Shown here: piece by piece, positions 1-56,100 of the stretch
How positions within the stretch are numbered: position 1 is the stretch's first letter
How the letters are laid out: the number at the start of each line of letters is the position of its first letter
DNA from: Haliotis rubra
Lineage: Eukaryota
DNA: 64,000 bases
Direction: 5' to 3'
Assembly: GCF_003918875.1 (NCBI RefSeq)
Contig: NW_025767522.1
Coordinates: 310,001-374,000, forward strand
Translations under genes and position numbers: made by a program
The notes under the pieces: model-generated
Databases searched by the model: none
The model's input: the letters and a program-made list of their open reading frames with translations, nothing else
Told to the model about the DNA's origin: nothing

Positions 1-570
1 ACCTGGCCTGAACACTAATTTGCAGTGATCTATTGATATAGTTTTCACACCTGTTTCCCCATATACACCATACAGAATTTGTTTCTGAGGATAGACAAGA
101 TTGGATAATTCATTCCAAGTGACGTTCTATATTTGATACCTCTCTTCAAGGAAAATGAATATTCTTTCATTAAGAAAGTAACACACATCTCTGACGTCGT
201 TGATATGGATGGCATGCATGGTTCTAAAACAAAGTTATAAAGGAATACATAGCGGTGGCGAACACAAAGGAATAAATACCGCCATGTCATAAATCATCAG
301 AATGTGTAGCCTATGTCAAAATGACTGCTTTATGATTCGGCTCCTGTGTGGCCAAACAGGAGTCGTGTAAGGTTAATATTTCACAAGGAACTAAGGTACC
401 TACTATCTGGCAGGTATGTGGGCTATCTTACTGTTGAGGGAGAACAAGAGGATGGGTCACAGTTTCAGTTTGATGACTTCCTCTCCTACTCTGTCGAGGA
501 CTATTGATTTATTGAGGACACAAGACATATATTGTAGGAGGGTATGGACTAACAAGATATATAGTCCATA

Positions 571-1864
571 CCGAACACCGCACAGTCCGTCTCACAGGGC
601 TGGTCCCCAATAAGGAACTTCTTGGTCCCTGGAACAACCAGCATGTGTGGACAGATGAATATATTGAAACAAAACAAATCACATGAAACAAAGTATCATC
701 GCTCCTGAAATATGACAAACCACACCACAAGTGCCAAATTTCAGAATGCAGTTTCATCCTATTCAACACATGTGGAGGAGGTCATGGAACGTCATGCAAT
801 ATTTTCCCACTTCAGTTATGATGCAATCCAGATCCCATCGTCTGTATTGCCATTGTCGGTTTCGATATAACAAGTGTCAAGTTTATATTTTGGTCCATCG
901 GAACCTACCCTCGCTGTTTAAACATATTTAACGTCTCTGTATATAATTCAGTTCACAACAGCTTAAAACTTCTGCATACCTATGAAGTCCGACAGGGATT
1001 GTAGATCCTTCTTAAACATTTCTGTTCCCTCCTCTTCTATGTGTCGGCCCAAGCCTTGACTCCATATTTGCCTTTTTACTTGTCGTTGAAACATCCAAAA
1101 CATAAACTTGCCTATTTTAAAAGCATTCAGCATCAAAGATTTGTCGTTGTCATATTGCCATCGGAAGAGGACAAGGAACCTGAAACCACAGTACCACAGT
1201 ACTACTCATTCACTATTCATTCATGCAAGCAACCTATGATGGAAATTGCCAGAAGTTTATCTTAAAGACGTAATGTGTCCCCCTAAAACATAACACCTGT
1301 TGAAAGTTACAACACATCTTACATCGTGTATTAACGTATTTTCGTTTGACGCCGTTACGTGAGTGAGTGAGTGAATTTGGTTTTACGCGGCGTTAGCAAT
1401 ATCACGGGAGACACCAAAATGGGCTTCACACATTGTACCCATGTAAGGAATCGAACCCGGGTCTTCGAACAAACGCTTTCAACACTAGGTTACCCGCCTA
1501 AGAGATCGAAGCACAGGATAGAATGAGCATGATGTTAATCACAGCATTGTCTAGTTCCGACATATACACACCGCTATCATATACAAGGATTATTCAAGCA
1601 ATCAATGTTTGCCGTAATGGCTACGATGGACAGACAAATTAAATGGCACCAACTGACTGTTTCTCACCAGTACAGATGTTCCTCCGCCATAACCTGCATC
1701 GCCAGAGCTACTCCTCTCTCAGCAGGACTCAGGTTCCTGTTGAGGTCCACTCCCAGGTTCTGGTTGAGGAACTCGATGCACAGTGTAGAGTCCGCTACTG
1801 CCTGTCCATTATACTCAATCCAAGTTAATTTGCCTTTTGATGAAGGTTGAAATCCATGGACGTT
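571..1864 (-). pseudogene. FAX/FAXC-like (metaxin/GST-like) gene copy B, fragmentary: exon 3 1864-1668, exon 4 1179-980, exon 5 628-571 (truncated); no exon 2 found upstream
   Basis: Exons translate to NVHGFQPSSKGKLTWIEYNGQAVADS..EEHLYW and FLVLFRWQYDNDK..SQGLGRH..LSDFI with AG/GT borders and the same 197/200-nt lengths as the paralogs. Exon 5 breaks mid-exon at 571 relative to copy F. Confidence 0.85.
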
Positions 1865-2113
1865 CTGTGTGGACGATCAAACTTTCATATAGAAAACTGA
1901 CACTTACATGGCTTAGGATTAAAGTGATTCATAAAGTATTGGGGTATTGGTGCTTGATCCAACTGAATATGTGTTTTGTGCAACAGCTAGGGGTATGAAT
2001 CGCTGCTCATGCAGTCAACAACTTGCTTTCTTGGACCAGATTCAGAGTGGGTGAGTGTGAGTGTGGGATTCACCCATGAGGGGAATAGAACTCGGGTCTT
2101 CAGCGTGTCGAGG

Positions 2114-2728
2114 CCTTCTTTGTCTTTTTCTCTCTATAAAATATTGTAATAGATCAAGGAACAGCTGATTATTCTCACTTGTCGCTGACATAAACTTAAA
2201 GTATTGTAACCCGGTCATTGTACGACATACACTGTGTAATTTAGTGTTCCATGATTTTAAACCGATATGCTACTCGTGACTGTTTTAAAATAGTACAATG
2301 GGCCGCTTCCGTGGTGTAGTGGTTAGAGCATCCGCCTGGAGGGCGGGAGCTCGCGGGTTCGATCTTCGGTCACGTCATACCAACATGCGTTAAAATATGG
2401 TACTTGTTGGTCCCTGCCTGGCGCTCGGCATTGATGGGTACAACAATGACTGGTCGGCTCGGAGTCTTTATAATGTGTCTGAGTGGTGTATTCATGCTTA
2501 ACTACGGCATGGCATGTCAGTGAGCGAGCTCTATAAAACCAGCTTAAATCTGGGCTAGTACAAGCAGCCGGAATGCAGTCTAATATTGTTTATAATACAC
2601 GAGGAGTCTCCTGAACAGAAAAAAATATACAGTCGAGCACCTTTAAGTTTATGTCAGCGACAAGTGAGAATAATCAGCTGTTCCTTGATCTATTACAATA
2701 TTTTATAGAGAGAAAAAGACAAAGAAGG
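2114..2728. repeat. Perfect 88-bp inverted repeat (2114-2201 / 2641-2728)
   Basis: ccttctttgtc...aaacttaaag at 2114-2201 is the reverse complement of 2641-2728. Confidence 0.9.
2301..2570 (+). mobile_element. tRNA-headed SINE with Meta-domain-like core, 3'-truncated (family S3)
   Basis: A/B-box-like head followed by the core aaaatatggtacttgttggtccctgcctggcgctcggcatt; a full copy lies at 29867-30214. Confidence 0.75.
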
Positions 2729-3256
2729 ACTGTGAGACAGACTATGTTTGACCCTACACAACGAAAATAAGGGCGAAAACGACTGTCTATCTACCCGATC
2801 CAACTGACAGTCCAAGGCCCTTACCACTTATGCCCCTTTTCAACATGATCTTGAAATACCGATAATCATGGTGGATGTTATTTAGGTCGGCCAGTTTAAC
2901 ACAGCGTAGGTTCACTGACATACCCAGAAAACGATGGAGAGTATCGTGGATAGTTTCACTGACCTGGACACATCACAGAAAGTACTGTATGTTGTCGGAG
3001 GTATTGTCGTATCAACCGTATCGCTCGTCGGCCTGAGGAAACTATGTTTCAAGTAAGTATCTCTTGTGAATAGCTAGTCAAGAGATACTCACTCGATATT
3101 TCCCTAAACAAACGGGTGACCCAGTTGTCGACGTCGCTCTGCAGAGCGTCGTGCAAAATGTCCACTGAAGTATGGGTTGGAATACAAGCTCGCCCCTCTA
3201 TGTCAACACAATACGCGTGCTCGTTGTGTAGGGTCAAACATAGTCCGTCTCACAGT
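2729..3256. repeat. 36-bp inverted repeat (2729-2764 / 3221-3256) bracketing FAX exon 1a
   Basis: actgtgagacagactatgtttgaccctacacaacga is the reverse complement of 3221-3256 with one mismatch; it is retained in the duplicate near 52961 and 53453. Confidence 0.85.
2873..2905 (+). promoter_or_regulatory. Conserved motif upstream of FAX first exons (candidate core promoter / 5'UTR element)
   Basis: ggatgttatttaggtcggccagtttaacacagc; related motifs precede exon 1b (4001-4030), exon 1 of D (29341-29377, minus) and the orphan exon 1 (20777-20808, minus). Confidence 0.4.
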
Positions 3257-6200
3257 TTCTGATTCGCATTATTTTATTTTCCGCTTCGCCCTTTCTGCAG
3301 CGGAAAGCACTGTATGAAGCAAGTCTAGATTTCCTCAGGTTCTGAATCTCCCTTCTTACTGGGGCTCCTATACAATTTCAAAGGAAGTAAATATTCAAAG
3401 ATTAAGAGTCAGCATGGGTCAGGTGTGGTCAAATGTACGTCGTTACAGGACCATTACATCTTTAGTTTTTATAACTGTCGTGCAACATTTTATTTGTTTG
3501 CCATATGTGCTTGAGTGTGATATTTCTGCTATAGCATAAACTCTTTACCTCCCCCCCCCCAGGTGAATGCATCAGTTCTGCTGACTGCACGGGGTGGTGG
3601 GGTAGCTTAGTGGTTAAAGCGTTCGCTCGTCACGCCGAAGACCGGGTTCGATTCCCCACATGGGTGCAGTGTGTGAAGCCCATATCTGGTGCCCCCCGCT
3701 GTGATATTGCTGGAATATTGCTAAATGCGGCGTAAAACAAAACTCACTCACTGACTGTACGGATTTGATGATGTATATAATTGAAAATAGTTGCTGTTAT
3801 TTATAATTTTTATACTACCATTAGAACACGATTTGAAGATATAAACAAATTCATGTTTCCAATGTATCCGTTATTCCTTTTCTTGAAACTTGATAAAACT
3901 TGAACACTGTTCACTGTGTAAACGAAATACTTTGATGAACATATATGCACCTTCTCGAAGCGACGTACGTTGACAGTGGCTTACCAGAGAGTGAATGTTT
4001 GGAGTTATTCAGGTCGATGTGTTCACCCACGTACGGCCGGTATCCAGATCAGGTACATACTTGTCGACGATTCACGAACCATGGAAGGGACATTTGGACA
4101 CTTTCGTAGACGGGTCACAGAAAATTGCATATGCAGTCGGAGGTGTTGTAGTAGCTGTTGCATCGGTCGTCGTCCTCAGGAAGCTCTTGTTAAAGTATGT
4201 AGTAAGATCTAGTTATCAAGTCAGCTGCGGAAACCACCGGTGAACGATTGTTTTGATACCCAGAGAAAACTCGCCGGGTATATCACAGTACAGTTTTTGT
4301 ATCAAACGGAAAGGGCTGCATGCCTTAGTCTATGTATGTATGAAGTTGTACCTATATGTAACAGTAAACAAAAGTACTGTGTTATTTAAAATAATAAAAT
4401 CTTTCGGTACAGCCCTGACCTCGATCGCCTTTTCGATATACATAACTTTCAGTGACTGAGAACGAAAGGTCAAAGGTCAAAAGTTAGAACAAGCACCCAA
4501 ACCGAAATCCAGGTCGTGAACAGAAAGAGACATATTTTCAGAGTTTAACAGTCATTATTCAAATATGTTAGACCCTTTTAAAGGTTCTGGATTATCGCAC
4601 TGGGTTACCAGGTTTTCTGGTTACTATAACAACAGGCGGTTTGCGGGTGTGCTAAACACGCTTACATTGACCTTGAATATCAATACGTGCAGATTCCTAT
4701 GTACATGATGACAGTGTACGGTTCTCGGTGTGAGGGGCGGTGGCGTAGATAGTGTTTAAAGCGTTCGATCGTCATGCGGAAGATCCGGGTTCGATTCCCT
4801 GGATGAGTAGAATGTGCAAAGCCAATTTCTGGTGTCCCCCACCGTGATATTGCTGGAATATTGCTAAAATCTGCGTAAAACCCAACTCACTCACTCTCGG
4901 TGTGAATCTGATAACATTGAGTATATAGTAGTCTGTAAATATTAGTTGGTTTTGGGCAGGTAGATATATATACCAGAAGAACTATTCGCCAGGTCAGCAC
5001 ACACTGATAGTTGTGGTGGCCGTGGTTCCCTAGAGCACCAAGCCTTACCCTCCGTAGGCTAATTGGAAATGATTAAGGAAGAAAAGTTTTCAGTCTCTGT
5101 CTCTCTGGATTAATACTACTACGTTGCCACTTCACATTTGTTTGTTTGTTTACGATGTCCTCATATAAGCCTCATATGGTAATAACATGTATTTCGTAAG
5201 AGCTGTGAATAATGTGAATTACCCCACCTAGGCTAGGGGTGAGTCCCCGCTCTTTGTTCCGGGACCAATATAGTCACTCGAGTGAATTGAAATTTGTACA
5301 CACTCCGATCGCGGCACCAGAGGTACATGTCTAAATAATTATTATGTACAACTTATGTATGTTATATACACATATGATGCACGAAATGGTTATGTTTACA
5401 TATCTTTTGGTTGCAAGAATAAACTATGTCTACATGTACATGCATTAAACCAGTTTAAGACACAGATTAATGATACCACAGCACAGGACAGCATGACTGT
5501 CTATAAATGTACAAAACATCAGTGATAAGGATTAACAATGGGGATTACATCTTATAATTTATAAAATTAAGGGTTCGAGACAAACATATGTCAAAGTTAA
5601 ATGGTAATTATCCTTTAGAGCTACATGTTCGACCCGTGAAGGTCCGGGTTAGAATTGACCTTCATTAGTGAGTGAGTGTGTTTAGTTTTACGCCGCACTC
5701 AGCAATATTTCAGCTATATGGCGGCGGTTTGTAAATAATCTGGGCCCCGTTTCACAAAGCGATCGTAGCGCTTAGATCGCGACCCCCACGCTTTAACATA
5801 GACTTACGACTGTCGTAGCGTTACGATCGATTTGAGAAACGGGGCCCTGGCTTTCAGTAACCCGTGCTTGTCGTAAGGCGACCAACGGGATCGGGTGGTT
5901 AGGCTCGCTGGCTTTGTTGCCACATGTCATCGGTTTCCATTTGCGATGCTCATACTGTTGATCACTGGATTGTCTGGTCCAAACTCGATTATTTACAGAC
6001 CACCGCCATATAGCTGGAATACAGCTGAGTGCGGCGTCAAACTAAATTCGCTGACTCACTCACTAAATGTTCAATCCGACTGTATAGGTGCTGAACCACG
6101 TGATTGCAGTACGTAACATGGCATTTTCAAGTGAAATATTCTTGACTTTAGCCATTCATATTGATATATTGACAATAGCCCATTGCTGCTCTTTCATAGT

Positions 6201-9200
6201 TGTGCATATGTTGTGTAAGGTAGGCAGGCGCAAAAATGGTTCTGATTATTTTCAAAGTCCACTGGACATTTGTAATTCCGAATAATTAGAAAATAAGTAG
6301 CTGTTTCAATATAGGTTTCAAACCGTGATATAACTGAAAAGTAAGGTTCAAAACGGCATTAAATGAGTGAGTGAATATGGTTTTTCATCCCTTTTAGCAA
6401 TTTTCCAGCGATTTTACTTCGGGTGACACCAGAAATGGTCTTCAGACATTGTACCCATGTGTCGAATCGACCCTGGGTCTTCGGCCTGACGAGCGAACTC
6501 TTCAACTACCCCACCACCCTTCTTAACGGCATTAAGGGGCGGTGCGGTAGCCTAGTGGTTAAAGTGTTGGCTCGTCACGCCGAGGACCCGGGTTCCAATC
6601 CCCACATGGGCACATTGTGTGCAGCCCATTTCTGGTGTCCCCCGCCATGATATTGCTGGAATATTGCTAAAAGCGGCGTAAAAACCATACTCACTCACTC
6701 ACTCTTAACGGCATTAAGACGGACCAACTTGTTTATACGCACTTATAACAACCCCTTTTCACTTGGTTGTGTACCACCTATGATAACTACCTAACAACAG
6801 ACATCACTTTAGTATCGACATGCAACAAATATTATTTGTACGTCGAACATATGCTCTTTTGTAAAACAGCACGGTGCTTGATAACTTAAGCTAATAAATT
6901 CAATATATTTCTATTGGATAGACAATTTGGTTGTTATATTGAGAACACTATGCCAATATTCCACAGGCAGAAGGCGAAGGAGTATCCCCGAGATACGGTG
7001 ATCCTTCATCAGATCGGTAGAGGTCCTTACGCCCCCAGCATGACGCCGTTTGCTGTGAAGCTGGAAACCTATCTCCGGATGGCCAGGATACCCTACCAGG
7101 TGGTGAATGATGTGTTGAGTGAGTGAGTGAGGTAAACCACTGGGAAGGACAGAACAAACCATCCAAGCAACAGACCATTATACACAGTCAGCCAGGTACA
7201 CATTGTTACCACCCGATACGCATAACTCGACTCCGACTACTCTGACTACAATGCCAGAGTTTCAATGAGTTACTGAGTGAGTATGGGTTGACGCCGGTTT
7301 TAGCAACATTCTAGCAATATCACGGCGGGGTACACCAGAAATGGGCTTCTCACATTGTACCAATGCGGGGAATCGAACCCGGGTCTTCGGCGTGACGAGC
7401 GAACGCCTTAACATTAGGCTACCCCACCGCCCCCCGAAAGTTTGGTAATTTGAACGTGGCTGTGGCACGTTGGTGGTCAGATCATCGCAGATCGTACAGA
7501 AACGTGAAGATCCGGATTAGAATAATATTATTGTTCTTCAGCAACCCATGCTTGTCGTAAGAGCAGACCAATGAGATCAGGCTTGCTGACATGGTTGACA
7601 CATCGATAAGAGATCGATGATCATGGTCCAGACTCTTTTATTTACAGACAGCTGGAATATTGCTGAGTGCTGCAACAACAAGCAAACAAAATCAGATCGT
7701 ACAGATATTTGGCTGCTGTGTTAGGCACCAACAGGGTCCAAAAGCATGTCTGAAATGCTCTATAATTTGTGTCCAGTAGCGAGATGAACCCTCCATGTCA
7801 ATGTTACCCTGCTGGTATTGCTAATGGGACTGGGGAATGATACAGAATGAAAAGTATCAATCTCTGTCTCTCAGGATTAGTATTTTGCCATCTTCACGTT
7901 TGTTTGTTTGTTTATTTAAGATGTCCTCATGTAAGCCACATATGGTAATAAAATGTAATTTGAAAGAGCCTTGAATTAATAGTACAAGTAACTTTTGCTC
8001 TGTGATCTTCCACTCAGAACCTCCAAGGGCTGAAAATGTCATCTAAGGGCAAGGTCCCCTGGATTGAGTATAATGGGAAGGCTGTGGCGGATTCGACATT
8101 ATGTATTGACTTCCTGAACGAAAAGCTGGAAGTGGACCTCCACCAGCACCTGAGTCCCCGGGACAAGGGTGCAGCTATGGCAATGCAGGTCATGACGGAG
8201 GAACATCTGTACTGGTGAGCCTAGAAAATGTTTGTTAGGATCGGTACAATGAAACCATTAAGATACATTCTACTATGAATTTGGAAAAAAAAACACGTAC
8301 ATGTGCCCGATCGATTTGAGGTTTCAAATAGCAATAACCGTTTCTGTGTGAAAGGTCGTGTTCTCGATGAAGTTAAAATATCATATAAAAGTCCCCCCCT
8401 GCTGATTAACATCGTTGACTGAAGGTATTTTGAATATATTTTGTGTAAATATTGGGAAAGTCTCATTTATTATCACTTAAAACATACTTTTCCAAATCAT
8501 TTCAAATATACTGAGGGAAACAAATAAAGGAACACAGGACAGTTCAAGCGTTCCTTTAATATATTCCAGTTTTCATCACCAGCTTGTGATGAATGGCGCT
8601 GTGGGAGGAAATCTGAGGAACACTGCAATGAAGTGGTGTTCCCTTATTTATTTCCTTCAGTATATGTCACTTAAGCTGTTGATGACTGACGATGTCCCTT
8701 GCTTCACGCTAATTACAGTCTGGACCTTGACTGGAAGCGGACGCACGACGTCGGAACTTCCCTTTAATACATGTAGTAATACTCTTTAACCAGGCCATGT
8801 AAAAGAACGTTATATCCTATGGTTAATACACGAATAAATATTAATGATAATGAACAGTTAGATTTGTGTTTCAGGTTCCTTGCTCTATTCCGCTACCAAT
8901 ATGACAACGACAAAACCTTTATTAAGCAAACGTTGAAGATAGGATGGTTTGTTGTACGGATTGCCAAGTATATGGTTGCAAATTCAACATGGTATCAAGG
9001 TTTGGGTCGCCACACAGAAGAGGAAGTGACACAGATGTTTAAGAAGGAGCTACAGGCTCTTTCTGACTTCATGGGTAAATCAAGCCCACAGGGCGTGTCA
9101 CGCTTAGAAACAGCGTTAGAAAGACATATAGGTATATAGACCCTACCCTAGTACTATATAAAAGGAAAGGGATGTAACGACGGAACCACCCCCTCCTCAG

Positions 9201-23577: not shown

Positions 23578-26500
23578 TCACTTGCTTGCCTCCCTTGTTC
23601 CACCGTGCGTGATGCACTGGTCCCAGTCCGGCCAGAATGCTTCCTTCATACGTTCACAGTAGGCGGCAGGTTGGGATAATTATCTGGGGAAAATAAGATG
23701 TTATCAACAAAAATGTTCCACAAACACCACTATGCATATGTCATACATGATACACAAATACTTCAGAAGAGACAAAACCGACGAGAGTTTAGAGCAATTT
23801 CTTTAGCCATAACGTAAACTTCGTCCAGAGTGCTATTGACTGCGGAGAACTGCGGGTCTCTGGCGTGACGAGCGAACGCTTTAACCACCAAGCTACCCCA
23901 TCGCCCACGTTGATACTGACTTATACAGCATTTGCAAACATCACACACTTTCTATAAGAATAATTGAAAATTTCTCAAAACCCTTTCATGTGGAATTCAC
24001 ATCGCGAATATGTATGAAAAGTGAGTGGAATAGAACGCTTGTCACATTTTACTACTCAGGAATAACAATGACGTATATGTGACGAGAGTGAAAATTTCGA
24101 TTAGGTAATTAATTGGAATATCACTGCCAACCTGTTTTCCGGGTTTCACCTTTTATGAGACTCTCAAATCCAGATCCATTAAACTGCCAATATGCCTGAG
24201 ACAGCATACCGAACAGAGAGCAATCCGCTTCACAGGGATCATCTCCCATCAGGAACTTCTTCCTCCCTAGTATACAGGATGTAACTTAGTTAATAATGTC
24301 CCTGTACCTGTACCTCCATTCAGATTGTACAGGATAAGTATGTATAAACCATATCAAGTTATCTAACAAAGGGGAAAAAATATAAATATTTCCTTTTCGA
24401 TTTCCATACAGTTGGTTGTTTGGTTTGTTGTTTAATGCCGCTCTCATAATATTCCAGCTTACAAGACCAAACAATCCAGTGATCAACAGCATGGTCATCG
24501 ATCTACGTAATGGGGATACGATGACATATGTCAACCAATCCAGCGAGCCTGACCACCCAATCCCGTTAGTCGCCTCTTACCACAATCACGGGTTGCTGAA
24601 GACCAATTCTAACCCGGATCTTCACCGCTAGATTTCCATACAGCATCGAAGAGAAGAGGGATTATGATATTCATGTCCTCTGTTGGTTTTTCTCCATTGT
24701 TACTGGTTAATTATAATGCAGGGACATTCAAACATGTGGTCGGCGCACGTTAAAAGAGTAAAGGCTTCTTGAAACAACTGACCGTCTGGTTTGGGGCGAT
24801 TGGGAAACTTAAGGTTTATAAATTATAGACTTACGTAACCTATATACTTAATCACTAAATATAACAATATATGAAAATCTCTTCATTTCAGTCTGGAGCC
24901 AAAGGGTTGCAGAATTGGATTCGAACCTTAAGTTGGGGTCAAAATTATATTTCTGAGTTTCTGTCTCAGACCTGCAAAACTTTGGGTTGAGGTACTGCCT
25001 CCTGTTCAAAGCAAGTTGATACAGGTTGTGTTTGTTTTGTCAGTTTCGTTTGTTCTTTTAAGCCTCGCATGGCACTAGTCCAACTGCAAGACAGCGGACT
25101 GTGGATATTCGAGATTGTACCGGGCAATCCTGTGAATGATATTTAGAGGCATGTTTCAAGCCGTCATCACACGCTATCAAACCAGTCTGTTAGAGTGACT
25201 ACCGATCCGTTTGGTCACCTATTACTACCAACACAACACAGTGACCTGTTCTAACCAGGGTGCCGTTCCACGAAAGCCTCTTAGCGCTACAACGTCTTAA
25301 ACCACATCGTAAACCAGGGCCCCGTTTCACACCGGGGTTCTATCATAGCACCACGAATGTCGTACGTCCTATACTGTAACATAGGCTTACAACAGCTCTT
25401 AAATTTTTATCTTAGTGGAAGGGTCGTAAATCATTACGCTGGGACATCCTAAAGTCGGTCGTATCCGCTAGGACGTCGTAGCTATGAGAGGCATTGGTGA
25501 AACGGCAACCACAGGGTCCCGTTTCACAAAGCTATCGTAGCGCTACGACTGTCGTACCTCCTATACTGTAACATAGACTCACGACAGTCGTAGCAGGAAC
25601 CTCCAAGGTGAATGTACCCAGTAATATAACCGAATGACTATTCAAAGACTCACTACCAAACTCAATTTTCACAAAAAATACCTATAAAGTCGGAGATAGA
25701 TTGGAAGTCCTTATACATCATTTCGACGACCTCTTCCTCCGTGTGGCGACCCTATCCCTGACTCCATGTTTGTTTTCTGATATGTCGTCGTATCATCCAT
25801 AGAAAGAACTTGGAGAATTTAAACGTTTCCAAAATAAACGATGCGTCTCTGCTGTACAACCAGCAGATTTGGGCAAGCAGCCTGGATCGGAATTTCAAAT
25901 CATCAGTACGTTGGTTGATTCGTGGAAATATGGTATATGTCAACATAGGGAATTGCATCAGACATAATTTTTGTCAGTGATGCGTCAATTTTTTAAATGT
26001 CTTCCATATGAGTGAATTTTATTTTTACGCCGCACTGAGCAATAGACCAGCTATATGGCCTGTAAATAATCGAGTCTTGACCAGACAATCCAGTGATCAA
26101 CAGCATGTGCATCGATCTACGCAATGGGGATACGATGACATGTGTCAACCATGTCAGCGAGCCTGACCACCCTATCTCGTTGCATGGGTTACTGAAGACC
26201 AATTAAAGTTGACATAACAGTACAGATGTTCCTCCGTCATGACCTGCATCGCTTGCGCTATACCCTTGTCAGCTGGACTCAGGGGCTTGTTGAGGTCCAC
26301 CCCAAGCTTCTGATTGAGGAAATGTATACACAGCGTGGTGTCCCCAATAGGTTGGCCATTGTACTCAATCCAGGGGACCTTGCCCTTAGGTGAAGGTTGC
26401 ATTCCATGGACGTTCTATGGAAAACGTGACACGGCATGAGGAACTATGCGCAGAAGAAAAACTGTGACTTATGTGAATATATACCATTCAAAAAAAGTAG

Positions 26501-29866: not shown

Positions 29867-30214
29867 TGAGGTGAAATTGGGTTTAACGTCGTACTTGAGA
29901 ATATTTCGCTCATATGATGACGTGCATGCGTGTGTATGTGTATGTGCGGCTGCTTGTACTAGCCCAGACTGAAGCTGGTTTTATAGTGCTAGCCCACTGA
30001 GATACCATGCCGCAGTGAAGCATGAATACCCCACTCAGACACATTATACTGACTCCGAGCCGACCAATCCTTGTTGTACCCATTAATGCCGAGCGCCAGG
30101 CAGGGACCAACAAGTACCATATTTTAACGTCTTTAGGTATGACGCAGTCGGGGATTGAACCCGCGACCTTCCGCTCTCCGGGCGGACGCTCTAACCACTA
30201 CACCACGGAGGCGG
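29867..30214 (-). mobile_element. Full-length Meta-like tRNA SINE (family S3); 5'-truncated copy 62008-62267 (+)
   Basis: tRNA head, Meta-like core, (CA)-rich stretch and tail gagcgaaatattctcaagtacgacgttaaac; TSD ttggataactttaga / ttgggtaactttaga. Confidence 0.85.
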
Positions 30215-47670: not shown

Positions 47671-48251
47671 TAACTTTTTCGTACCCTTTTAACGAACACC
47701 TGGCCTGAACACTAATTTGCAGTGATCTATTGGTATAGTGTTCACACCTGTTTCCCCATTTACACCATACAGAATTTGTTTCTGAGGATAGACAAGATTG
47801 GATAATTCATTCGAAGTGACGTTCTATATTTGATACCTCTCTTCAAGGAAAATGATATACTTTATGATTGTTTTCCAGACATCCTTGCTATTCAATTCAG
47901 AATATTCTTTCATTAAGAAAGTAACACACATCTCTGACGTCGTTGATATGGATGGCATGCATGGTTCTAAAACACAGTTATAAAGGAATACATAGCGGTG
48001 GCGAACACAAAGGAATAAATACCGCCATGTCATAAATTATTAGAAAGTGCAGCCTATGTCAAAATGACTGCTTTATGATTCTGCTCCTGTGAGGCCAAAC
48101 AGGAGTCGTGTAAGGTTAATATTTCACAAGGAACTAAGGCACCTACTATCTGGCAGGGATGTGGGCTATCTTACTGTTGAGGGAGAACAAGAGGATGGGT
48201 AGCAGTTTCAGTTTGATGACTTCCTCTCCTACTCTGTCGAGGACTATTGAT

Positions 48252-50583
48252 TTATTGAGGACACAAGACAGATATTGTAAACACTTCCTTCACACGTTCA
48301 CAGTAGACGGCCAGGTTGGGGTATTTGTCTACGAACAAAAGGGAGAGGACATAAGCATCACGTAATTAACAACAAATGATAACTGTAATTCATATGTAAC
48401 CAGCTAGATCATTTCAATTTATCCAAATTAAACAAATTCATACAGAACTGAAACATAGTCAAAATACATTGAGAATTGAAAGTTAAAATCTTCAGGTAAT
48501 GATGTAGTTTGGTGGATTAATTGTGTTGCCTTTGTTTTTATGTATATTTGAATCAGTCTGATATCGAAAATGTCAATCTAACGGAAAGAAATACACAACT
48601 CCCTTTATACATGTAACGACATATTGACAGCCAGTTACAATAATGGAGGAATATTTGTCAAACTTGATTCTGTTGATGTTTATCGACTGATACGGTTTAC
48701 ATACCTATACAACACATTTTGTAATTGTGATGAGGAAAAGGTAGGTGTACATTATGTACGCTATGTTAACAGTACCCTGCAATGTTTTGAGGTTGGTACA
48801 GAGTTCTTTAATGTATGGTTCTGAGCCAGGAAATCTCTGGTCATTCTGAACGAATATGTAAAGAAACCTGACGCAACTATTGGTAATTATAGAGAAACTA
48901 TGCATCAACCATGTTATGGTATTAAGTCAGGATGAGAGTGGGGGTGGGGGTGGTGGTGGAGAAAAGAAATGTTTTTAAACCTGTGAAGTAGAAATAATAA
49001 CTTTAAAAGCAACAAAATGATCCTACGCTACCGTTCTTGTAACTGGTTCTGTGCCAGGGATTCTCTGGTCATTCTAAACGAAAATTAAAAGTACAACTGA
49101 TGCAACCATTTGTGATTATTGAGGAACTATACATCAGCCATGGTTTGATGAGAGAGAGAGGAGGGGGTGGGGGTTTGGGGGTTGGAGTTCAAAACCGTGA
49201 AGTGGAAATGATAACTTAAAAGTCACTTGCCCTTGAGGATGTCCTTATGTCCAGTGCCCATGAACTGCCAGTAGAACTCTGACAGCTGGCCGAACACCGC
49301 ACAGTCCGTCTCACAGGGCTGGTCCCCCATCAGGAACTTCTTGGTCCCTGGAACAACCAGCATGTGTGGCCAGATGAATATATTGAAACAAAACAAATCA
49401 CATGAAACAAAGTATCATCGCTCCTGAAATATAACAAACCACACCACAAGTGCCAAATTTCAGGATACAGTTTCATCCTATTCAACACATGTGGAGGAGG
49501 TCATGGAACGTCATGCAATATTTTCCAACTTCAGTTATGATGCAATCAAGATCCCATCGTCTGTATTGCCATTGTCGGTTTCGATATAACAAGTGTCAAG
49601 TATATATTGTGGTCCATCGGAACCTTCCCTCACTGCTCAAACATATTTAACGTCTCTGTATATAATTCAGTTCACAACAGCTTGAAACTTCTGCATACCT
49701 ATGAAGTCCGACAGGGATTGTAGATCCTTCTTAAACATTTCTGTTCCCTCCTCTTCTATGTGTCGGCCCAAGCCTTGACTCCATATTTGCTTTTTTACTT
49801 GTCGTTGAAACATCCAAAACATAAACTTGCCTATTTTAAAAACATTCAGCATGAAAGATTTGTCGTTGTCATATTGCCATCGGAAGAGGACAAGGAACCT
49901 GAAACCACAGTACCACAGTACTACTCATTCACTATTCATTCATGCAAGCAACCTATGATGGAAATTGCCAGAAGTTTATCTTAAAGACGTAATGTGTCCC
50001 CCTAAAACATAACACCTGTCGAAAGTTACAAAACATCGTACATCGTGTATTAACGTATTTTCGTTTGACGCCGTTACGTGAGTGAGTGAGTGAGTGAATT
50101 TGGTTTTACGCGGCGTTAGCAATATCACGGGAGACACCAAAATGGGCTTCACACATTGTACTCATGTAAGGAATCGAACCCGGGTCTTCGAACAAACGCT
50201 TTCAACACTAGGTTACCCGCGTAAGGGATCGAAGCACAGGATAGAATGAGCATGATGTTAATCACTGCATTGTCTAGTTCCGACATGTACACACCGCTAT
50301 CATATACAAGGATTATTCAAGCAATCAATGTTTGCCGTAATGGCCACGATGGACAGACAAATTAAATGGCACCAACTGACTGTTTCTCACCAGTACAGAT
50401 GTTCCTCCGCCATAACCTGCATCGCCTGAGCTACTCCTCTGTCAGCAGAACTCAGGTTCCTGTTGAGGTCCACTCCCAACTTCTTGTTGAGGAACTCGAT
50501 GCACTGTGTCCGCCACTGCCTGTCCATTATACTCAAATCCAAGTGAATTTGCCCTTTGATGAAGGTTGAAACCCATGGACGTT
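48252..50583 (-). pseudogene. FAX-like copy F (duplicate of B): exon 3 50583-50391 (frameshifted), exon 4 49898-49699, exon 5 49347-49231 (GC donor), exon 6 from 48328, truncated near 48279
   Basis: Exon 3 is 193 vs 197 nt; exon 5 reads TKKFLMGDQPCETDCAVFGQLSEFYW; exon 6 runs into inverted sequence. Confidence 0.87.
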
Positions 50584-50595
50584 CTGTGTGGACGA

Positions 50596-50654
50596 GGCAC
50601 CCCTTGAAGAGCAACCCCCTCGTGGTGGGTGCTGGGTAACGCCAATGGCTCTTT
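50596..50654 (+). ncRNA. Compact HDV-like self-cleaving ribozyme fold at the LINE 5' end
   Basis: P1 GGCACCC/GGGTGCT (G1-U wobble), P2 GAAGAGC/GCTCTTT, P3 ACC/GGT, L3 CCCTCGT, P1.1 CC/GG, J4/2 GCCAA; starts exactly at the insertion junction. Confidence 0.8.
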
Positions 50655-50730
50655 GCCCCCGTGTGGACCCGGGGTCGAATAGGTCCACAGCACCCCATTG
50701 CTGGTTGTAAGAGGCGACCAAATTGGGCAA
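50653..50730 (+). ncRNA. Second pseudoknotted RNA element in the LINE 5'UTR, homologous to the S2 SINE head
   Basis: Outer TTGCCC/GGGCAA, stem TGTGGACC/GGTCCACA, loop-flank pairing GGGGT/ACCCC, hairpin GGTTG-taagagg-CGACC; compensatory changes versus SINE copies. Confidence 0.7.
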
Positions 50731-51247
50731 CCCGTTTGCCCTGGGTTGCATCCCTGTGTCGGCAGAGGAAGGGAGTCTGGTGGTTGAGGATGACGGAACC
50801 GGCAATAGTGTTCAATAATCCAACACACCACTTCGACACTAACTTTGCCTAGACGGGTGGTAGAATAGGCCCGATTCTACCAATCGGCTGGTCACGCTTT
50901 GCCCTGTGCATGGAATGTCTATACAAAATTTGGTATTACATAACACTTTTGACAATGTTCAAAATGTTAACTTATATTCTACCAAAACAAATTAGCCTCG
51001 CAGACCCATGCACAGAAGGCGGTGGCTCATGGGCCAATCTGGTGATGCTGACCTCCGATTTCTGTACGTCTCCAATTGATTGTCATGGACAGAACCATCC
51101 TGACCTTTAATCTGGTAGGCAGCTACACCATTTCATGTCAAATTCGCTGGAGTATAACACCCCCTTATCCCTGGTCTTTGCAGCTTGGAGACCCGCTGCA
51201 GTATAAGATCGTCCTTGTTGACACTCCACGGTGGGTGGGGAGAGGGG

Positions 51248-52528
51248 ATGCCGAACCACATTACTAACGACATGGCTTCCCAATACCCAGGTTCAAAACG
51301 AAGACACATGGATACTGACAACTCCTCGTCTGACGAGAGTACGCCCCTCCGACCTGACCACTGGCCACGTTTCCTGATCATTTAGGCTTGTGACAAGCAA
51401 CCTTTGCAATTGAACCCTTTTGCAATCTCCAAAGGTATCGTTGGTATCTGTGGAGAGGTTGCCAATGTTACAAAGCTTCGATCTGGCTCTCTTCTGATAG
51501 AATGTACCCGGAAACAACAATCACTAAATCTCCTCAAAATACAAGAATTTGTCAATATCAAGGTCGCTCTCTCAGCACACAAAACACTTAACTCGTGTAG
51601 AGGCATTGTGCGGGACAGAGCTCGATGCCTGTCTGACATGACTGAAGAACAAATTGTCAAGGAACTCTCTCAGCAATCCGTCACAGCCGTAAAACGATTC
51701 ACCTTCAAAAAGGACGGTGTTGTTCAACCAACGAACACCTATCTCTTCACGTTCGCGCGAGCAAACATTCCTGACTCGATTAGAGCTGGTTATTGTAGCA
51801 TTGGAGTGGAGGTGTATGTCCCCAATCCACTCCGGTGCTACAACTGCCAAAAGTTTGGACATGGATCCAAGTCCTGTCGTTCCTCTGCTGTTTGTTACCG
51901 CTGTGGTGACAAGCATGAGGGCAACGACTGTACTAAGGAAGTGAAGTGCACAAACTGCGGTGGTAACCATATGGCCTCTTCCAAGTTCTGTCCAGTGTGG
52001 AAACGCGAATCCGAGATACTAAAGATCAAGCACAAAGTAAATATCTCCTTTCACGAAGCAAAGAAGAGGGTTGCAAGTTTAACTGCAGCCCCTTCAACCA
52101 TCACCTACTCTTCTGCTGTCTCCCGTCCTACAATCACTACTGCAACCATCTCATGTCAGACCGACCTGACATGGATCATGTCTTCTCAGCCAACTGAACT
52201 CAACACAACTCAGCCTATCTCAGCAACTCCATCTCCAACGCCAAAAGTCAAAACCTCTGAATCACAAACACCAGAACAAATGCCAAAACCAGAAACAGAA
52301 ACTGCGCGCAGAAAAAGGGAAAAAAAGAGTCTAGAGAGACTAAAACAACTTGAACAACTGCCAAACACAAAACCAAAGGCCACCTCTCCTTCAGAGGTCC
52401 CCATCGAGGTCCATAACTCCTTTGGCCCTCTGGATATGGAGGAAACTCCAACTCCACCTCACACCAATAGGAGTTCATCAAACGCTTTCTCACGTTCACG
52501 TGACATGTCACCAGTGGAAGCACCATGA
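51248..52528 (+). CDS. LINE ORF1 gag-like nucleic-acid-binding protein (one in-frame TAG at 51383-51385)
   Basis: WPRFLII*..NPFAISKGI..KLRSGSLLIEC; YVPNPLRCYNCQKFGH, CYRCGDKH and CTNCGGNH zinc knuckles; Pro/Thr-rich tail. Confidence 0.88.
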
Positions 52529-53166
52529 ATCCACAAAACATGATCCAATGGAATTGCAGAGGACTTAAGAATAATTATAATGAATAACAGCTATTTATTC
52601 AAGACTTCATACCAACATGCGTTAAAAATATGGTACTTGTTGGTCCCTGCCTGGCGCTCGGCATTAATGGGTACAACAATGACTGGTCGGCTCGGAGTCT
52701 TTTTAATGTGTCTGAGTGGTGTATTCATGCTTAACTACGGCATGGCATGTCAGTGAGCGAGCTCTATAAAACCAGCTTAAATCTGGGCTAGTACAAGCAG
52801 CCGGAATGCAGTCTCATATTGTTAATCATACACGAGGAGTCTTCTGAACAGAAAAAAATATACAGTCGAGCACCTTTAAGTTTATGTCAGCGACAAGTGA
52901 GAATAATCAGCTGTTCCTTGATCTATTACAGTATTTTATAGAGAGAAAAAGACAAAGAAGGACTGTGAGACAGACTATGTTTGACCCTACACAACGAAAA
53001 TAAGGGCGAAAACGACTGTCTATCTACCCGATCCAACTGACAGTCCAAGGCCCTTACCACTTATGCCCCTTTTCAACATGATCTTGAAATACCGATAATC
53101 ATGGTGGATGTTATTTAGGTCGGCCAGTTTAACACAGCGTGGGTTCAGTGACATACCCAGAAAACG

Positions 53167-56100
53167 ATGGAGAGTATCGTGGATAGTTTCACCGACCTGG
53201 ACACATCACAGAAAGTACTGTATGTTGTCGGAGGTATTGTCGCATCAACCGTATCGGTCGTCGGCCTGAGGAAACTATGTTTCAAGTAAGTATCTCGTGT
53301 GAATAGCTAGTCAAGAGATACTCACTCGATATTTCCCTAAACAAACGGATGACCCAGTTGTCGACGTCGCTCTGCAGAGCGTCGTGCAAAATGTCCACTG
53401 AAGTATGGGTTGGAATACAGGCTCGCCCCTCTATGTGAGCACAATACGCGTGCTCGTTGTGTAGGGTCAAACATAGTCTGTCTCACGGTTGCTGATTGGC
53501 ATTATTATTTTCCTCTTCGCCCTTTCTGCAGCGGAAAGCACTGTATGAAGCACACTAGATTTCCTCAGGTTCTGAATCTCCCTTCTTACTGGGGCTCCTA
53601 TGCAATTTCAAAGGAAGTAAATATTCAAAGATAAAGAGTCAGCATAGGTCAAGTGTGGTCAAATGTACGTCGTTACGGGATCATTACATCTTCAGTTTTT
53701 TATAACTGTCATGCTACATTTTATTTGTTTGCCATATGTGCTTGAGTGTGATATTTCTGCTCGAGCATAAACTCTTGCTCTTTACGTCGGTGTGTTCACC
53801 CACTTACGGCCGGTATCCAGTTCAGGTACATACTAGTCGACGATTCACGAACCATGGAAGGGACATTTGGACACTTTCGTAGACGGGTCACAGAAAATTG
53901 CATATGCAGTCGGAGGTGTTGTAGTAGCTGTTGCATTGGTCGTCGTCCTCAGGAAGCTCTTGTTAAAGTATGTAGTAACATCTAGTTATCAAGTCAGCTG
54001 CGGAAACCACCGGTGAACGATTGTTTTGATACCCAGAGAAAACTCGCCGGGTATATCACAGTACAGTTTTTGTATCGAACGGAAAGGGCTGCATGTCTTA
54101 GTCTATGTATGTATGAAGTCGTACCTATATGTAACAGTAAACAAAAGTACTGTGTTATTTAAAATGATAAAATCTTTTGGTACAGCCCTGACCTCGATCG
54201 CCTTTTCGATATACATAACTTTCAGTGACTGAGAACGAAAGGTCAAAGGTCAGATCAAAGGTCAAAAGTTAGAACAAGCACCCAAACCGAAATCCAGGTC
54301 GTGAACAGAAAGAGACATATTTTCAGAGTTTAACAGTCATTATTCAAATATGTTAGACCCTTTTAAAGGTTCTGGATTATCGCACTGGGTTACCAGGTTT
54401 TCTGGTTACTATAACAACAGGCGGTTTGCGGGTGTGCTAAACAGGCTTACATTGACCTTGAATATCAATACGTCCAGATTCCTATGTACATGATGACAGT
54501 GTACGGTTCTCGGTGTGAGGGGCGGTGGGGTAGATAGTGATGGAAGCGTTCGATCGTCATGCCGAAGATCCGGGTTCGATTCCCTGGATGAGTACAATGT
54601 GTGAAGCCCATTTCTGGTGTCCCCCACCGTGATATTGCTGGAATATTGCTAAAAGCTGCGTAGAACCCAACTCACTCACTCTCGGTGTGATCTGATAACA
54701 TTGAGTCGATAGTTTTCTGTAAATATATAAATAAACCAGAAGAACTATTCGCCAGGTCAGCACACACTGATAGTTGTGGTGGCCGTGGTTCCCTAGAGCA
54801 CCAAGCCTTACCCTCCGAAGGCTAATTGGAAATGATTAAGGGAGAAATGTTTTCAGTCTCTGTCTCTCAGGATTAATACTACTACGTTGCCACTTCACAT
54901 TTTGTTTGTTTGTTTACGATGTCCTCATATAAGCCTCATATGGTAATAACATGTATTTCGTAAGAGCTGTGAATAATGTGAATTACCCCACCTAGGCTAG
55001 GGGTGAGTACCCGCTCTTTGTTCCGGGACCAATATAGTCACACGAGTGAATTGAAATTTATACACACTCCGATCGCGGCACCGAGGTACATGTCTTAATA
55101 ATTATTATGTACAACTTATGTATGTTAAATACACATATGATGCACGAAATGGTTATGTTTACATATCTTTTGGTTGCAAGAATAGACTATGTCTACATGT
55201 ACATGCATTAAACCAGTTAAGACACAGATTAATGATACCACAGCACAGGACAGCATGACTGTCCATAAATGTAAAAGAAATAAGTGATAAGGATTAACAA
55301 TGGGGATTACATCTTATAATTTATAACATTAAGGGTTCGAGACAAACATATGTCAAAGTTAAATGGTAATTATCCTTTAGAACTACATGTTCGACCCGTA
55401 AAGATCCGGGTTAGAATTGACCTTCATTAGTGAGTGAGTGTGTTTAGTTTTACGCCGCACTCAGCAATATTTCAGCTATATGGCGGCGGTTTGTAAATAA
55501 TCTGGGCCCCGTTCCACAAAGCGATCGTAGCGCTTAGATCGCGAACCCCACGCTTTAACATAGACTTACGACTGTCGTAGCGTTACGATCGCTTTGAGAA
55601 ACGGGGCCCTGGCCTTCAGTAACCCGTGACTTGTCGTAAGAGGCGACCAACGGGATCGGGTGGTTAGGCTCGCTGGCTTGGTTGCCACATGTCATCGGTT
55701 TCCATTTGCGATGCTTATGCTGTTGATCACTGGATTGTCTGGTCTAAACTCGATTATTTACAGACCGCCGCCATATAGCTGGAATACAGCTGAGTGCGGC
55801 GTAAAACTAAATTCACTCACTCACTCACTAAATGTTCAATCCGACTGTATAGGTGCTGAACCACGTGATTGCAGTACGTAACATGGCATTTTCAAGTGAA
55901 ATAATCTTGACTTTAGTCATTCATATTGATATATTGACATGACCCATTGCTGCTCTTTCACAGTTGTGCGTATGTCGTGTAAGTTAGGCAGGCGCAAAAA
56001 TGGTTCTGATTATTTTCAAAGTCCACTGGACATTTTTAATTCCGAATAATTCTGAAAAATAAGTACCTGTTTCAATATAGGTTTCAAGCCGTGATATAAC

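What the first reader, a model, noticed from the sequence alone, without database searches (positions are those of the whole stretch)
50596..50654. LINE begins exactly at G1 of a minimal, almost P4-less HDV-like ribozyme
The empty site in unit 1 (ggacga|tcaa, 1876) fixes the junction at 50595/50596. The next 59 nt form the nested double pseudoknot with a G-U at the cut site, L3 CCCUCGU and a J4/2 C followed by NAA. HDV-like ribozymes are established at the 5' ends of R2, L1Tc/ingi and some other LINEs; one on a CCHC-ORF1 I/Nimb-like mollusc element, with the junction independently fixed, is notable. P2 has one bulge or mismatch in this copy.
Basis: partly seen in the sequence, partly recalled or inferred. 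Interest (0 to 1): 0.75.

Follow-up and report, generated by a model that had tools for sequence, protein, structure and literature searches.

The report
P4-less HDV-like ribozyme heading abalone LINE
The first 60 bases of this retrotransposon copy are a very small self-cutting RNA of the hepatitis-delta type that marks the exact start of thousands of LINE copies in an abalone genome; this is a well-supported example of a mechanism already known, and such a ribozyme was already reported from abalone in 2011.

Summary
Window 50596-50655 folds as a nested double pseudoknot of the HDV type. It has a 7-bp P1 with G1·U38, a 3-bp P3, L3 CCCUCGU, a 2-bp P1.1 and an 8-bp P2. Five bases (GUAAC) stand in place of P4, and J4/2 is GCCAA with C50642 as the catalytic C.

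The element starts at G1 in 28 of 30 sister copies. Target-site duplications abut G1 in two full-length copies.

The same ribozyme heads other LINE families in this genome, Haliotis asinina and H. rufescens, although their ORF1 proteins are only 42-60% identical. Five base pairs show compensatory changes (four in P2, one in P1). The P3/L3 core matches the validated drz-Agam-1 and Drosophila R2 ribozymes.

The window copy itself is dead: it is cut to 2 kb, has a U-to-C change in L3, and lies antisense to its host gene.

It is not very new. HDV-like ribozymes at LINE 5' ends are established, and a P4-less one "with only 5 nucleotides" was reported from Haliotis discus (cited in PMC3774820). This scan also found it before on other DNA of this genome (s1-352093).

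The side result of most interest is that sister LINE families start directly at the next RNA module and lack the ribozyme.

The parts
50573..50595 (+). Target DNA directly upstream of the element (host intron). It is identical to unit 1 at 1854-1876.
50596..50655 (+). The whole HDV-like ribozyme (60 nt). The predicted cleavage is 5' of G50596.
50596..50602 (+). P1 5' strand, GGCACCC. It pairs with 50627-50633; G1·U38 is the wobble at the cut site.
   Evidence: G·U in 29/29 sequences. The pair C6-G33 is replaced by U-A in two H. rufescens copies.
50605..50612 (+). P2 5' strand, UGAAGAGC. It pairs with 50648-50655 and forms the pseudoknot helix.
   Evidence: four of its eight pairs show changes on both sides.
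50614..50626 (+). P3 (ACC/GGU) closing L3 (CCCUCGU). Most copies have UCCUCGU; C50617 is a private change of this copy.
   Evidence: The majority core ACCUCCUCGUGGU is identical to drz-Agam-1-3 and to the Drosophila R2 catalytic region.
50627..50633 (+). P1 3' strand, GGGUGCU.
50634..50635 (+). The two Gs of P1.1. They pair with C50619 and C50618 in L3.
   Evidence: 98% of cells paired.
50636..50640 (+). Five-base stand-in for P4 (GUAAC; GUCAC in other families), with a single possible G-C pair.
   Evidence: It matches the description 'only 5 nucleotides instead of a P4 stem' in PMC3774820.
50641..50647 (+). J4/2, GCCAAUG. C50642 is the candidate catalytic cytosine (the C75 equivalent), followed by Y-A-A.
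   Evidence: C47, A49 and A50 are invariant; position 48 is C or U.
50648..50655 (+). P2 3' strand, GCUCUUUG. U50654 is C in most copies.
50656..50920 (+). Conserved, structured rest of the 5' UTR, roughly element nt 61-325. Its first part (CCCCGUG-hairpin) is the 5' end of sister LINE families that lack the ribozyme.
51404..52528 (+). ORF1 with three CCHC zinc knuckles.
50596..52623 (+). The window's copy of the LINE. It holds only the first 2.0 kb of a roughly 5.85-kb element; the rest was lost in a deletion that also took 495 bp of flank.
50390..50583 (-). Host exon (GST_N_4-like) on the opposite strand. Its acceptor AG lies 10 nt from the LINE start.

Best explanation
Window 50596-50655 is a copy of a P4-less HDV-like (delta-like) self-cleaving ribozyme that forms the first 60 nt of a large group of abalone LINEs. 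These LINEs carry a CCHC ORF1, an ORF2 with AP-endonuclease, RT and RNase H, and a (CTCAA)n tail.

Proposed mechanism. Steps 1-3 are inferred from the family's known chemistry; step 4 is shown.
1. The element is transcribed from outside, or from a start at or upstream of G1.
2. The RNA folds into the double pseudoknot. P1 stacks on P1.1 and the GUAAC turn, and P2 stacks on P3.
3. C47 (50642) and a metal ion held by the L3 U·G pair catalyse attack of the 2'-OH of the upstream nucleotide. This cuts exactly 5' of G1 and leaves the LINE RNA with a 5'-OH and no flanking sequence.
4. That RNA is reverse-transcribed, so every full-length new copy starts at G1.

The window copy is a dead relic. It is truncated to 2 kb, has U22C in L3 and C59U in P2, and lies antisense to its host gene.
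For: 1. All core features are present in the right order.
2. Two Rfam HDV models align it end to end with G1 at 50596. RF00094 scores 25.8 bits (E 0.069) and RF02682 scores 22.7 bits (E 0.031).
3. 28/30 sister copies start at G1 with unrelated flanks. The same holds for other families. 9-bp target-site duplications abut G1 in L031 and L034.
4. The ribozyme is kept in LINE families whose ORF1 is only 42-60% identical, in three genomes.
5. On 29 distinct sequences, 97.5% of cells pair, against 40-50% when partners are slid. Five pairs change on both sides (P2: A-U to G-C, G-C to A-U, A-U to C-G, A-U to G-C; P1: C-G to U-A). 0/500 shuffles reach the covariation score. A DNA promoter would not need compensatory changes in a pseudoknot helix.
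6. C47, A49, A50, L3 positions 23-28 and G1·U38 are invariant.
7. [quoted passage not shown]
8. There are 1847 exact genomic matches to the 5' half and 0 in the reversed control.
9. The literature already reports an HDV-like ribozyme with 5 nt instead of P4 in Haliotis discus (PMC3774820).
Against: No cleavage assay and no RNA 5'-end data are available. The only public runs are contigs and none covers the first 50 nt informatively.

Both Rfam matches are below the gathering scores (25.8-30.4 against 50; 22.7-28.5 against 44).

P3, P1.1 and most of P1 never vary, so they carry no covariation evidence. Copies with A19 changed keep U31.

Much of the covariation comes from a few lineages, so independent events are fewer than cells.

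Sister families manage a defined 5' end without the ribozyme, so another way of defining the 5' end exists in this group.
Confidence: 0.85

Rival explanations
1. The conserved 5' end is mainly an internal promoter or initiator. Transcription starts at G1, and the RNA fold serves another purpose, such as binding of the LINE proteins, translation or stability, without self-cleavage.
For: Identical 5' ends in many copies are also what an internal promoter gives. The whole first 325 nt or so of the 5' UTR is conserved across families, not just the ribozyme. Sister families without the ribozyme still have a sharp 5' end. Matetovici et al. read a roughly 70-bp LINE-derived head in mollusc SINEs as a promoter (PMC4758252).
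Against: Compensatory changes keep a pseudoknot helix paired, which is selection on RNA, not DNA. The fold reproduces the full HDV active site, with a core identical to two validated ribozymes. The position where such a ribozyme would cut is exactly the element boundary. A non-catalytic RNA has no reason to keep C47, the G1·U38 pair and the L3 sequence invariant.
Confidence: 0.05
2. Dual element, as in L1Tc Pr77. The same 60-nt stretch, or the adjoining conserved UTR, acts both as an internal promoter at the DNA level and as a ribozyme at the RNA level. The ribozyme then trims only read-through transcripts.
For: There is precedent in L1Tc/NARTc (PMC3383444, PMC3185411). About 265 further conserved bases follow the ribozyme. 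The elements spread to over 1800 full-length-headed copies, many presumably at sites with no upstream promoter.
Against: Nothing here tests promoter activity. This reading is an extension of the best explanation rather than a contradiction of it.
Confidence: 0.09
3. The HDV-like fold is a chance match at a LINE end.
For: The strict descriptor alone hits shuffled windows 0.25 times per 64 kb. The Rfam scores are below threshold.
Against: Covariation, conservation across species and families, coincidence with the 1-nt boundary, and an identical core to validated ribozymes.
Confidence: 0.01

Closest known systems
HDV-like ribozyme of Haliotis discus with 5 nt in place of P4 (Webb & Luptak 2011, RNA Biol 8:719, as cited in PMC3774820)
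   Same: Same genus-level host (abalone), same ribozyme class, and the same unusual feature: five nucleotides where P4 should be. This is very probably the same ribozyme family.
   Different: The review is not held in the library. I could compare neither the sequence nor whether its authors tied it to a LINE 5' end. The present genome appears to be another Haliotis species.
drz-Agam-1 (Anopheles gambiae) and Drosophila R2 5' ribozymes
   Same: The P3-L3-P3' core ACCUCCUCGUGGU is identical, followed by P1 3' and GG. R2 ribozymes cut at or near the element's 5' junction.
   Different: Those ribozymes have a real P4 and often a long J1/2. R2 is site-specific in rDNA, has a single ORF and a restriction-like endonuclease. 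The abalone element is dispersed and has a CCHC ORF1 and an AP endonuclease.
L1Tc/ingi Pr77 ribozyme (L1TcRz) of trypanosomatids
   Same: An HDV-like ribozyme in the first 77 nt or so of an APE-type LINE. It is shared between otherwise divergent LINE families and their non-autonomous partners, and it cuts at +1 (PMC3185411, PMC4035085).
   Different: The host kingdom and the sequence differ. Pr77 has been shown to be a promoter as well. No promoter test exists here.
Minimal (P4-less) HDV-like ribozymes drz-Mtgn and theta ribozymes of gut phages (Riccitelli 2014; bioRxiv 10.1101/2023.06.13.544163)
   Same: The same reduced architecture without a P4 domain, in about 50-60 nt.
   Different: Those are from microbiome or phage DNA and, for theta, process tRNA 3' trailers. 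Here the context is a eukaryotic LINE 5' end.
LINE-derived 'LP' heads of mollusc LP-SINEs and Nimb/RTE LINEs (Matetovici et al. 2016, PMC4758252)
   Same: A module of about 68-70 bp confined to the extreme 5' end. It is shared between unrelated LINE families and SINEs, including Haliotis SINEs.
   Different: It was interpreted as a promoter.

Membership tests
HDV-like (delta-like) self-cleaving ribozymes | Nested double pseudoknot in the order P1-J1/2-P2-P3-L3-P3'-P1'-P1.1-(P4)-J4/2-P2'. | tested here: met
   Read directly from the sequence. Found by the descriptor scan. 97.5% of cells pair on 29 sequences, against 40-50% when partners are slid.
HDV-like (delta-like) self-cleaving ribozymes | The cleavage site is immediately 5' of G1, which forms a G·U wobble closing P1. 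| tested here: met
   G1·U38 in 29/29 sequences. The element boundary is at G1. Cleavage itself was not observed.
HDV-like (delta-like) self-cleaving ribozymes | A catalytic cytosine in J4/2 (the C75 equivalent) followed by N-A-A. | tested here: met
   C47, A49 and A50 are invariant; position 48 is C/U. The catalytic role is inferred.
HDV-like (delta-like) self-cleaving ribozymes | L3 of type UCCUCGN, supplying the two Cs of P1.1 and the U/G pair at the metal site. | tested here: met
   UCCUCGU in nearly all copies, identical to drz-Agam-1-3 and Drosophila R2. The window copy itself has C at the first L3 position. The role of the U·G pair rests on my knowledge of HDV structures.
HDV-like (delta-like) self-cleaving ribozymes | Covariation supporting the helices. 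| tested here: met
   P2 has 4 pairs and P1 has 1 pair with changes on both sides. P3 and P1.1 are invariant and so uninformative. A19 variants are not compensated.
HDV-like (delta-like) self-cleaving ribozymes | A score above the Rfam gathering threshold (RF00094, RF02682). | tested here: not met
   25.8-30.4 bits against 50, and 22.7-28.5 bits against 44. Both models expect a P4 stem, which this RNA lacks.
HDV-like (delta-like) self-cleaving ribozymes | Site-specific self-scission giving 2',3'-cyclic phosphate and 5'-OH ends. | not testable with these tools
   Needs an in vitro transcription and cleavage assay, or 5'-OH-specific RNA sequencing. The public runs are contigs only.
5'-terminal ribozymes of non-LTR retrotransposons (R2, R4/Dong, RTE, Baggins, L1Tc type) | The ribozyme's cut site coincides with the 5' boundary of full-length copies. 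| tested here: met
   28/30 copies. Other families agree. TSDs abut G1. The empty site in unit 1 agrees.
5'-terminal ribozymes of non-LTR retrotransposons (R2, R4/Dong, RTE, Baggins, L1Tc type) | Release of the element RNA from a longer co-transcript. | not testable with these tools
   No raw RNA reads are available.
Minimal (P4-less) HDV-like ribozymes | The P4 domain is replaced by a few nucleotides. | tested here: met
   GUAAC or GUCAC, 5 nt, in all 29 sequences.
I/Nimb-like LINE (I superfamily) | CCHC ORF1, plus an ORF2 with AP endonuclease, RT and RNase H. | tested here: met
   Pfam zf-CCHC_6, Exo_endo_phos(_2), RVT_1 and RNase_H on pieces of several copies.
I/Nimb-like LINE (I superfamily) | Placement of the RT inside the I or Nimb clade by phylogeny. 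| not tested
No reference LINE RT set was available.

The most novel reading that the evidence does not exclude
The 60-nt ribozyme is a portable 5' cassette. It sits in front of an older structured 5' module (CCCCGUG-hairpin...). That module by itself forms the 5' end of sister LINE families (L036, L040, L041, L080-L082) and occurs inside SINEs.

The roughly 68-70-bp 'LP head' may then be this HDV-like ribozyme or a remnant of it. Matetovici et al. (2016) found that head at the 5' ends of Nimb and RTE LINEs from locust, zebrafish and turtle and of mollusc LP-SINEs, and read it as a LINE promoter. 'LP-SINEs' would in that case be ribozyme-headed, Pol II or read-through-dependent SINEs, and ribozyme cassettes would be exchanged between LINE clades across phyla.
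Probability: 0.3. Interest if true: 0.55.

Novelty: new member of a known kind. Interest (0 to 1): 0.3.

Why it matters
It gives a clean example, rich in covariation, of how a dispersed LINE gets a precise 5' end wherever it lands. A 60-nt ribozyme that needs no upstream sequence trims any read-through transcript to the element's first base.

With over 1800 headed copies and several families in one genome, abalone LINEs are a good natural data set for the sequence tolerance of minimal, P4-less HDV-like ribozymes. Sister families with and without the cassette make it possible to test how such modules are gained or lost.

For genome annotation, the motif marks full-length LINE 5' ends in Haliotis.

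It does not change the picture of ribozyme biology. Both the mechanism and an abalone P4-less example were already published.

Tried and rejected
1. Rfam at gathering thresholds on the whole window gave only two tRNA-like hits and no ribozyme. The HDV matches appear only in E-value mode.
2. Searching the whole genome with RF00094 scored 84 of 8867 candidates. It returned one sub-threshold copy of the same family and was useless for finding diverged relatives.
3. MFE folding of 85 nt cannot see pseudoknots and gave z = -0.77, which is uninformative.
4. RNA evidence. The only runs are Logan contigs, four of them merely guessed to be RNA. They show the host exon and parts of the LINE from about 50646 onward. 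They show nothing about the RNA 5' end or cleavage. This is not evidence against expression.
5. C8U and G53A occur together in three copies. I first took this for covariation. In the correct register G53 pairs with C17, so G53A breaks a pair. The two changes are just linked by descent.
6. The 'bulge in P2' is rejected. It came from pairing A18-U51 and C17-G52. The cross-family alignment shows C17-G53 and a contiguous helix.
7. P3 covariation. Copies with A19 changed (35 found) all keep U31, giving G·U or a mismatch, so there is no compensation.
8. My loose descriptor gives about 22 hits per window and is not specific. Only the strict form was used.
9. Recurrent weak descriptor hits at about +240 and just upstream of ORF1 in other families look like conserved hairpins, not HDV folds.
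10. Webb & Luptak 2011, Ruminski 2011, Webb 2009 and Jimenez 2015 are not held. The supplements of PMC4758252 are not held. The published H. discus and LP-head sequences could therefore not be compared.
11. A search for LP-SINE heads by pattern returned only mutated LINE heads.

Full report
**1. The observation**

The window holds two copies of a segment that are about 96% identical: unit 1 from 1 onward and unit 2 from 47698 onward. Homology runs 571-1876 against 49290-50595 and stops there. The 23 bases before the break are identical in both units. So 50595/50596 is a real breakpoint.

It is not a clean empty site. Homology resumes at 2372/52604, so 495 bp of unit 1 have no counterpart in unit 2. 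The inserted DNA aligns with only the first 2.0 kb (94.9% identity) of a roughly 5.85-kb element. About 20 bp of similarity at 52604-52623 suggest a later deletion that removed the rest of the element and some flank.

The 5' boundary is confirmed independently in three ways:
- Of the 30 best genomic matches to 50596-50900, 28 begin with GGCACCC preceded by unrelated sequence. The other two are short 5' truncations.
- In the full-length copies L031 and L034, 9-bp target-site duplications (CACAAGATA; AAGTTTGTC) lie directly against G1 and after the (CTCAA)n tail.
- The same boundary is seen in other families.

**2. The fold**

Numbering 50596 as G1, the sequence gives:

| Element | Positions | Sequence |
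|---|---|---|
| P1 | 1-7 / 32-38 | GGCACCC / GGGUGCU, with G1·U38 |
| J1/2 | 8-9 | CU |
| P2 | 10-17 / 53-60 | UGAAGAGC / GCUCUUUG |
| linker | 18 | A |
| P3 | 19-21 / 29-31 | ACC / GGU |
| L3 | 22-28 | CCCUCGU |
| P1.1 | C23, C24 with G40, G39 | |
| in place of P4 | 41-45 | GUAAC |
| J4/2 | 46-52 | GCCAAUG |

Two Rfam HDV models align it end to end with G1 at 50596. RF00094 gives 25.8 bits and RF02682 gives 22.7 bits. Both are below their gathering scores, as expected for models that contain a P4 stem. The best copy genome-wide scores 30.4 bits.

A strict descriptor of my own finds exactly this site in the window. It finds 0.25 sites per dinucleotide-shuffled window. The fold alone is therefore not decisive. 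The context is.

**3. What it belongs to**

The element has an ORF1 with three CCHC knuckles (51404-52528). Its ORF2 carries AP-endonuclease, RT and RNase H domains, and all copies examined are broken. ORF1 homologues are almost all Haliotis proteins, at 61% identity at best. The genome is therefore an abalone or a close relative. The I/Nimb label fits the domain set but was not tested by phylogeny.

**4. Comparative evidence**

Taking ORF1 relatives from H. asinina and H. rufescens, and using distant ORF1 proteins as probes on the window's own genome, I found the same ribozyme 600-900 nt upstream of ORF1. It occurs in families whose ORF1 is only 42-60% identical to the window's.

The core is unchanged across these families. 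That core is P1, P3, L3, P1.1, the 5-nt turn and GC(Y)AA. P2 differs between families and always in pairs:
- GAAGAGC / GCUCUUC
- GAAGGGC / GCCCUUC
- GAAAGGC / GCCUUUC
- GGCGAGC / GCUCGCC

In H. rufescens the P1 pair C6-G33 is replaced by U-A.

On 29 distinct sequences (alignment A1) with the pseudoknotted structure written out:
- 97.5% of cells are paired, against 40-50% for slid partners.
- Five pairs have changes on both sides.
- No shuffle of 500 reaches the observed covariation score.

C47, A49, A50, G1·U38 and L3 positions 23-28 are invariant. Position 48 is C or U, so the catalytic C is 50642 and not 50643.

The 13-nt core ACCUCCUCGUGGU is letter for letter that of drz-Agam-1-3 (sequence list in bioRxiv 10.64898/2026.10.01.755752). 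It is also that of the 'conserved catalytic region' used as a primer site for Drosophila R2 ribozymes (PMC3414825).

The genome holds 1847 exact matches to a pattern for ribozyme nt 1-30 and none to the reversed pattern.

**5. How it most likely works**

Shown:
- an RNA-level constraint, from the compensatory changes in a pseudoknot helix
- a complete HDV-type active-site sequence
- coincidence of the predicted cut site with the first base of thousands of copies

Inferred from the known chemistry of the family: transcripts that enter the element from upstream fold and cut 5' of G1 through C47 and an L3-bound metal ion. This yields a LINE RNA with a 5'-OH and no host sequence, which is then copied into new full-length insertions.

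The main rival, a DNA promoter with a start at G1, does not explain the covariation or the catalytic-core identity. A dual promoter-plus-ribozyme arrangement, as in L1Tc Pr77 (PMC3383444), remains open. The next 265 nt or so of the UTR are also conserved between families, after which similarity drops to noise.

**6. This particular copy**

- It has C instead of U at the first L3 position. None of the other 29 copies has this. By my knowledge of HDV structures, this is the U that pairs with the L3 G at the metal site.
- It has U59 instead of C, which gives a G·U pair in P2.
- It lacks everything beyond element nt ~2028.
- It lies antisense to a host exon (50390-50583, minus strand, GST_N_4-like), 10 nt from that exon's acceptor AG.

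It is a relic. Its value is as a witness of the family.

**7. Comparison with what is known**

HDV-like ribozymes at LINE 5' ends are established for R2, R4/Dong, RTE, Baggins and L1Tc/ingi (PMC3774820, PMC3185411, PMC4035085).

[quoted passage not shown] That description fits this RNA exactly. The review is not held, so I could not compare sequences or see whether a LINE was mentioned.

Earlier notes of this scan report the same ribozyme at another place in this genome (s1-352093) and a derived SINE head (s1-349420). I treat them as leads. My own tests agree with the first.

I therefore class the finding as a new member of a known kind.

**8. A side result**

Related LINEs in two ENA assemblies (L040, L041, L080-L082) and one H. 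rufescens family (L036) share the conserved UTR. They begin, with unrelated flanks, at CCCCGUGGGGAC... That is the module that follows the ribozyme in the window's element, at about nt 61. Part of that module also occurs in SINE copies in the window.

So the ribozyme behaves as a separable cassette. Matetovici et al. (PMC4758252) described a 5' 'LP head' of about 68-70 bp. It is shared by Nimb and RTE LINEs of insects and vertebrates and by mollusc LP-SINEs, including those of Haliotis, and they read it as a promoter. Whether that head is this ribozyme could not be tested here.

**9. Limits**

- No cleavage assay and no raw RNA reads were available.
- Covariation events are few and come from related lineages.

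Noticed in passing
L040:3409, L041:145 and 3217, L080:2413, L081:2414, L082:249 and 2283, L036:3378; window 50656 onward: Sister LINE families share the conserved 5' UTR but start, with unrelated flanks, at CCCCGUGGGGAC... This is the module directly after the ribozyme, so they have no HDV-like head. How their 5' end is defined is unexplained.
   Followed up: partly
window 24566-24625 (-), 7530-7571 (+), 55617-55650 (+); LINE nt 66-126 = 50661-50721: SINE-like repeats in the window share a segment of about 40-60 nt (…CAGCAACCCRTG…GTAAGAGGCGACYAA…) with the LINE's 5' UTR. The window's LINE family carries an extra segment of about 35-40 nt here compared with other families.
   Followed up: partly
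window 50596-50920; alignment: About the first 325 nt of the 5' UTR are 70-90% conserved between families whose ORF1 is only 42-60% identical. Similarity then falls to noise. The region includes a conserved hairpin, GGGUGGUAGAAU…AUUCUACC, at about 50856-50890.
   Followed up: partly
window 50390-50595 (-) and unit 1 1670-1876: The LINE sits 10 nt upstream of the acceptor AG (12 nt from the exon's first base) of a GST_N_4-like exon in one of two duplicated gene units. It replaces that copy's branch-site and polypyrimidine region, so splicing of this paralogue may be affected.
   Followed up: no
window 1-6000 against 47698-55765: A large segmental duplication (95-97% identity) spans the window ends. 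The two units differ by the LINE fragment, a 495-bp loss and a gap of about 1 kb at 48279-49290.
   Followed up: no
window 7365-7422 (-) and 30140-30204 (-): Two weak tRNA matches just over the Rfam threshold (29.8 and 29.6 bits). They lie in repeated SINE-like sequence and are probably tRNA-derived SINE heads.
   Followed up: no
L068:505-570 and 866-931; L043:1214 and 3315: Two ribozyme heads lie 361 nt apart in L068 and 2.1 kb apart in L043. LINE 5' fragments are followed by a second full head, through nested insertion or 3'-deleted copies like the one in the window.
   Followed up: no
L054:1364, L056:1380, L073:1369: A recurrent weak hit of my HDV descriptor (P1 with one mismatch, long P4-like insert, 7-10-bp P2) lies about 130 nt upstream of ORF1 in several families. 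It is probably a conserved structure and not a second ribozyme.
   Followed up: no
proteins P0095, P0096: LINE ORF1 homologues are filed in public databases as 'hypothetical protein [Thiolapillus sp.]'. This is most likely host (mollusc) DNA in a symbiont metagenome bin.
   Followed up: no
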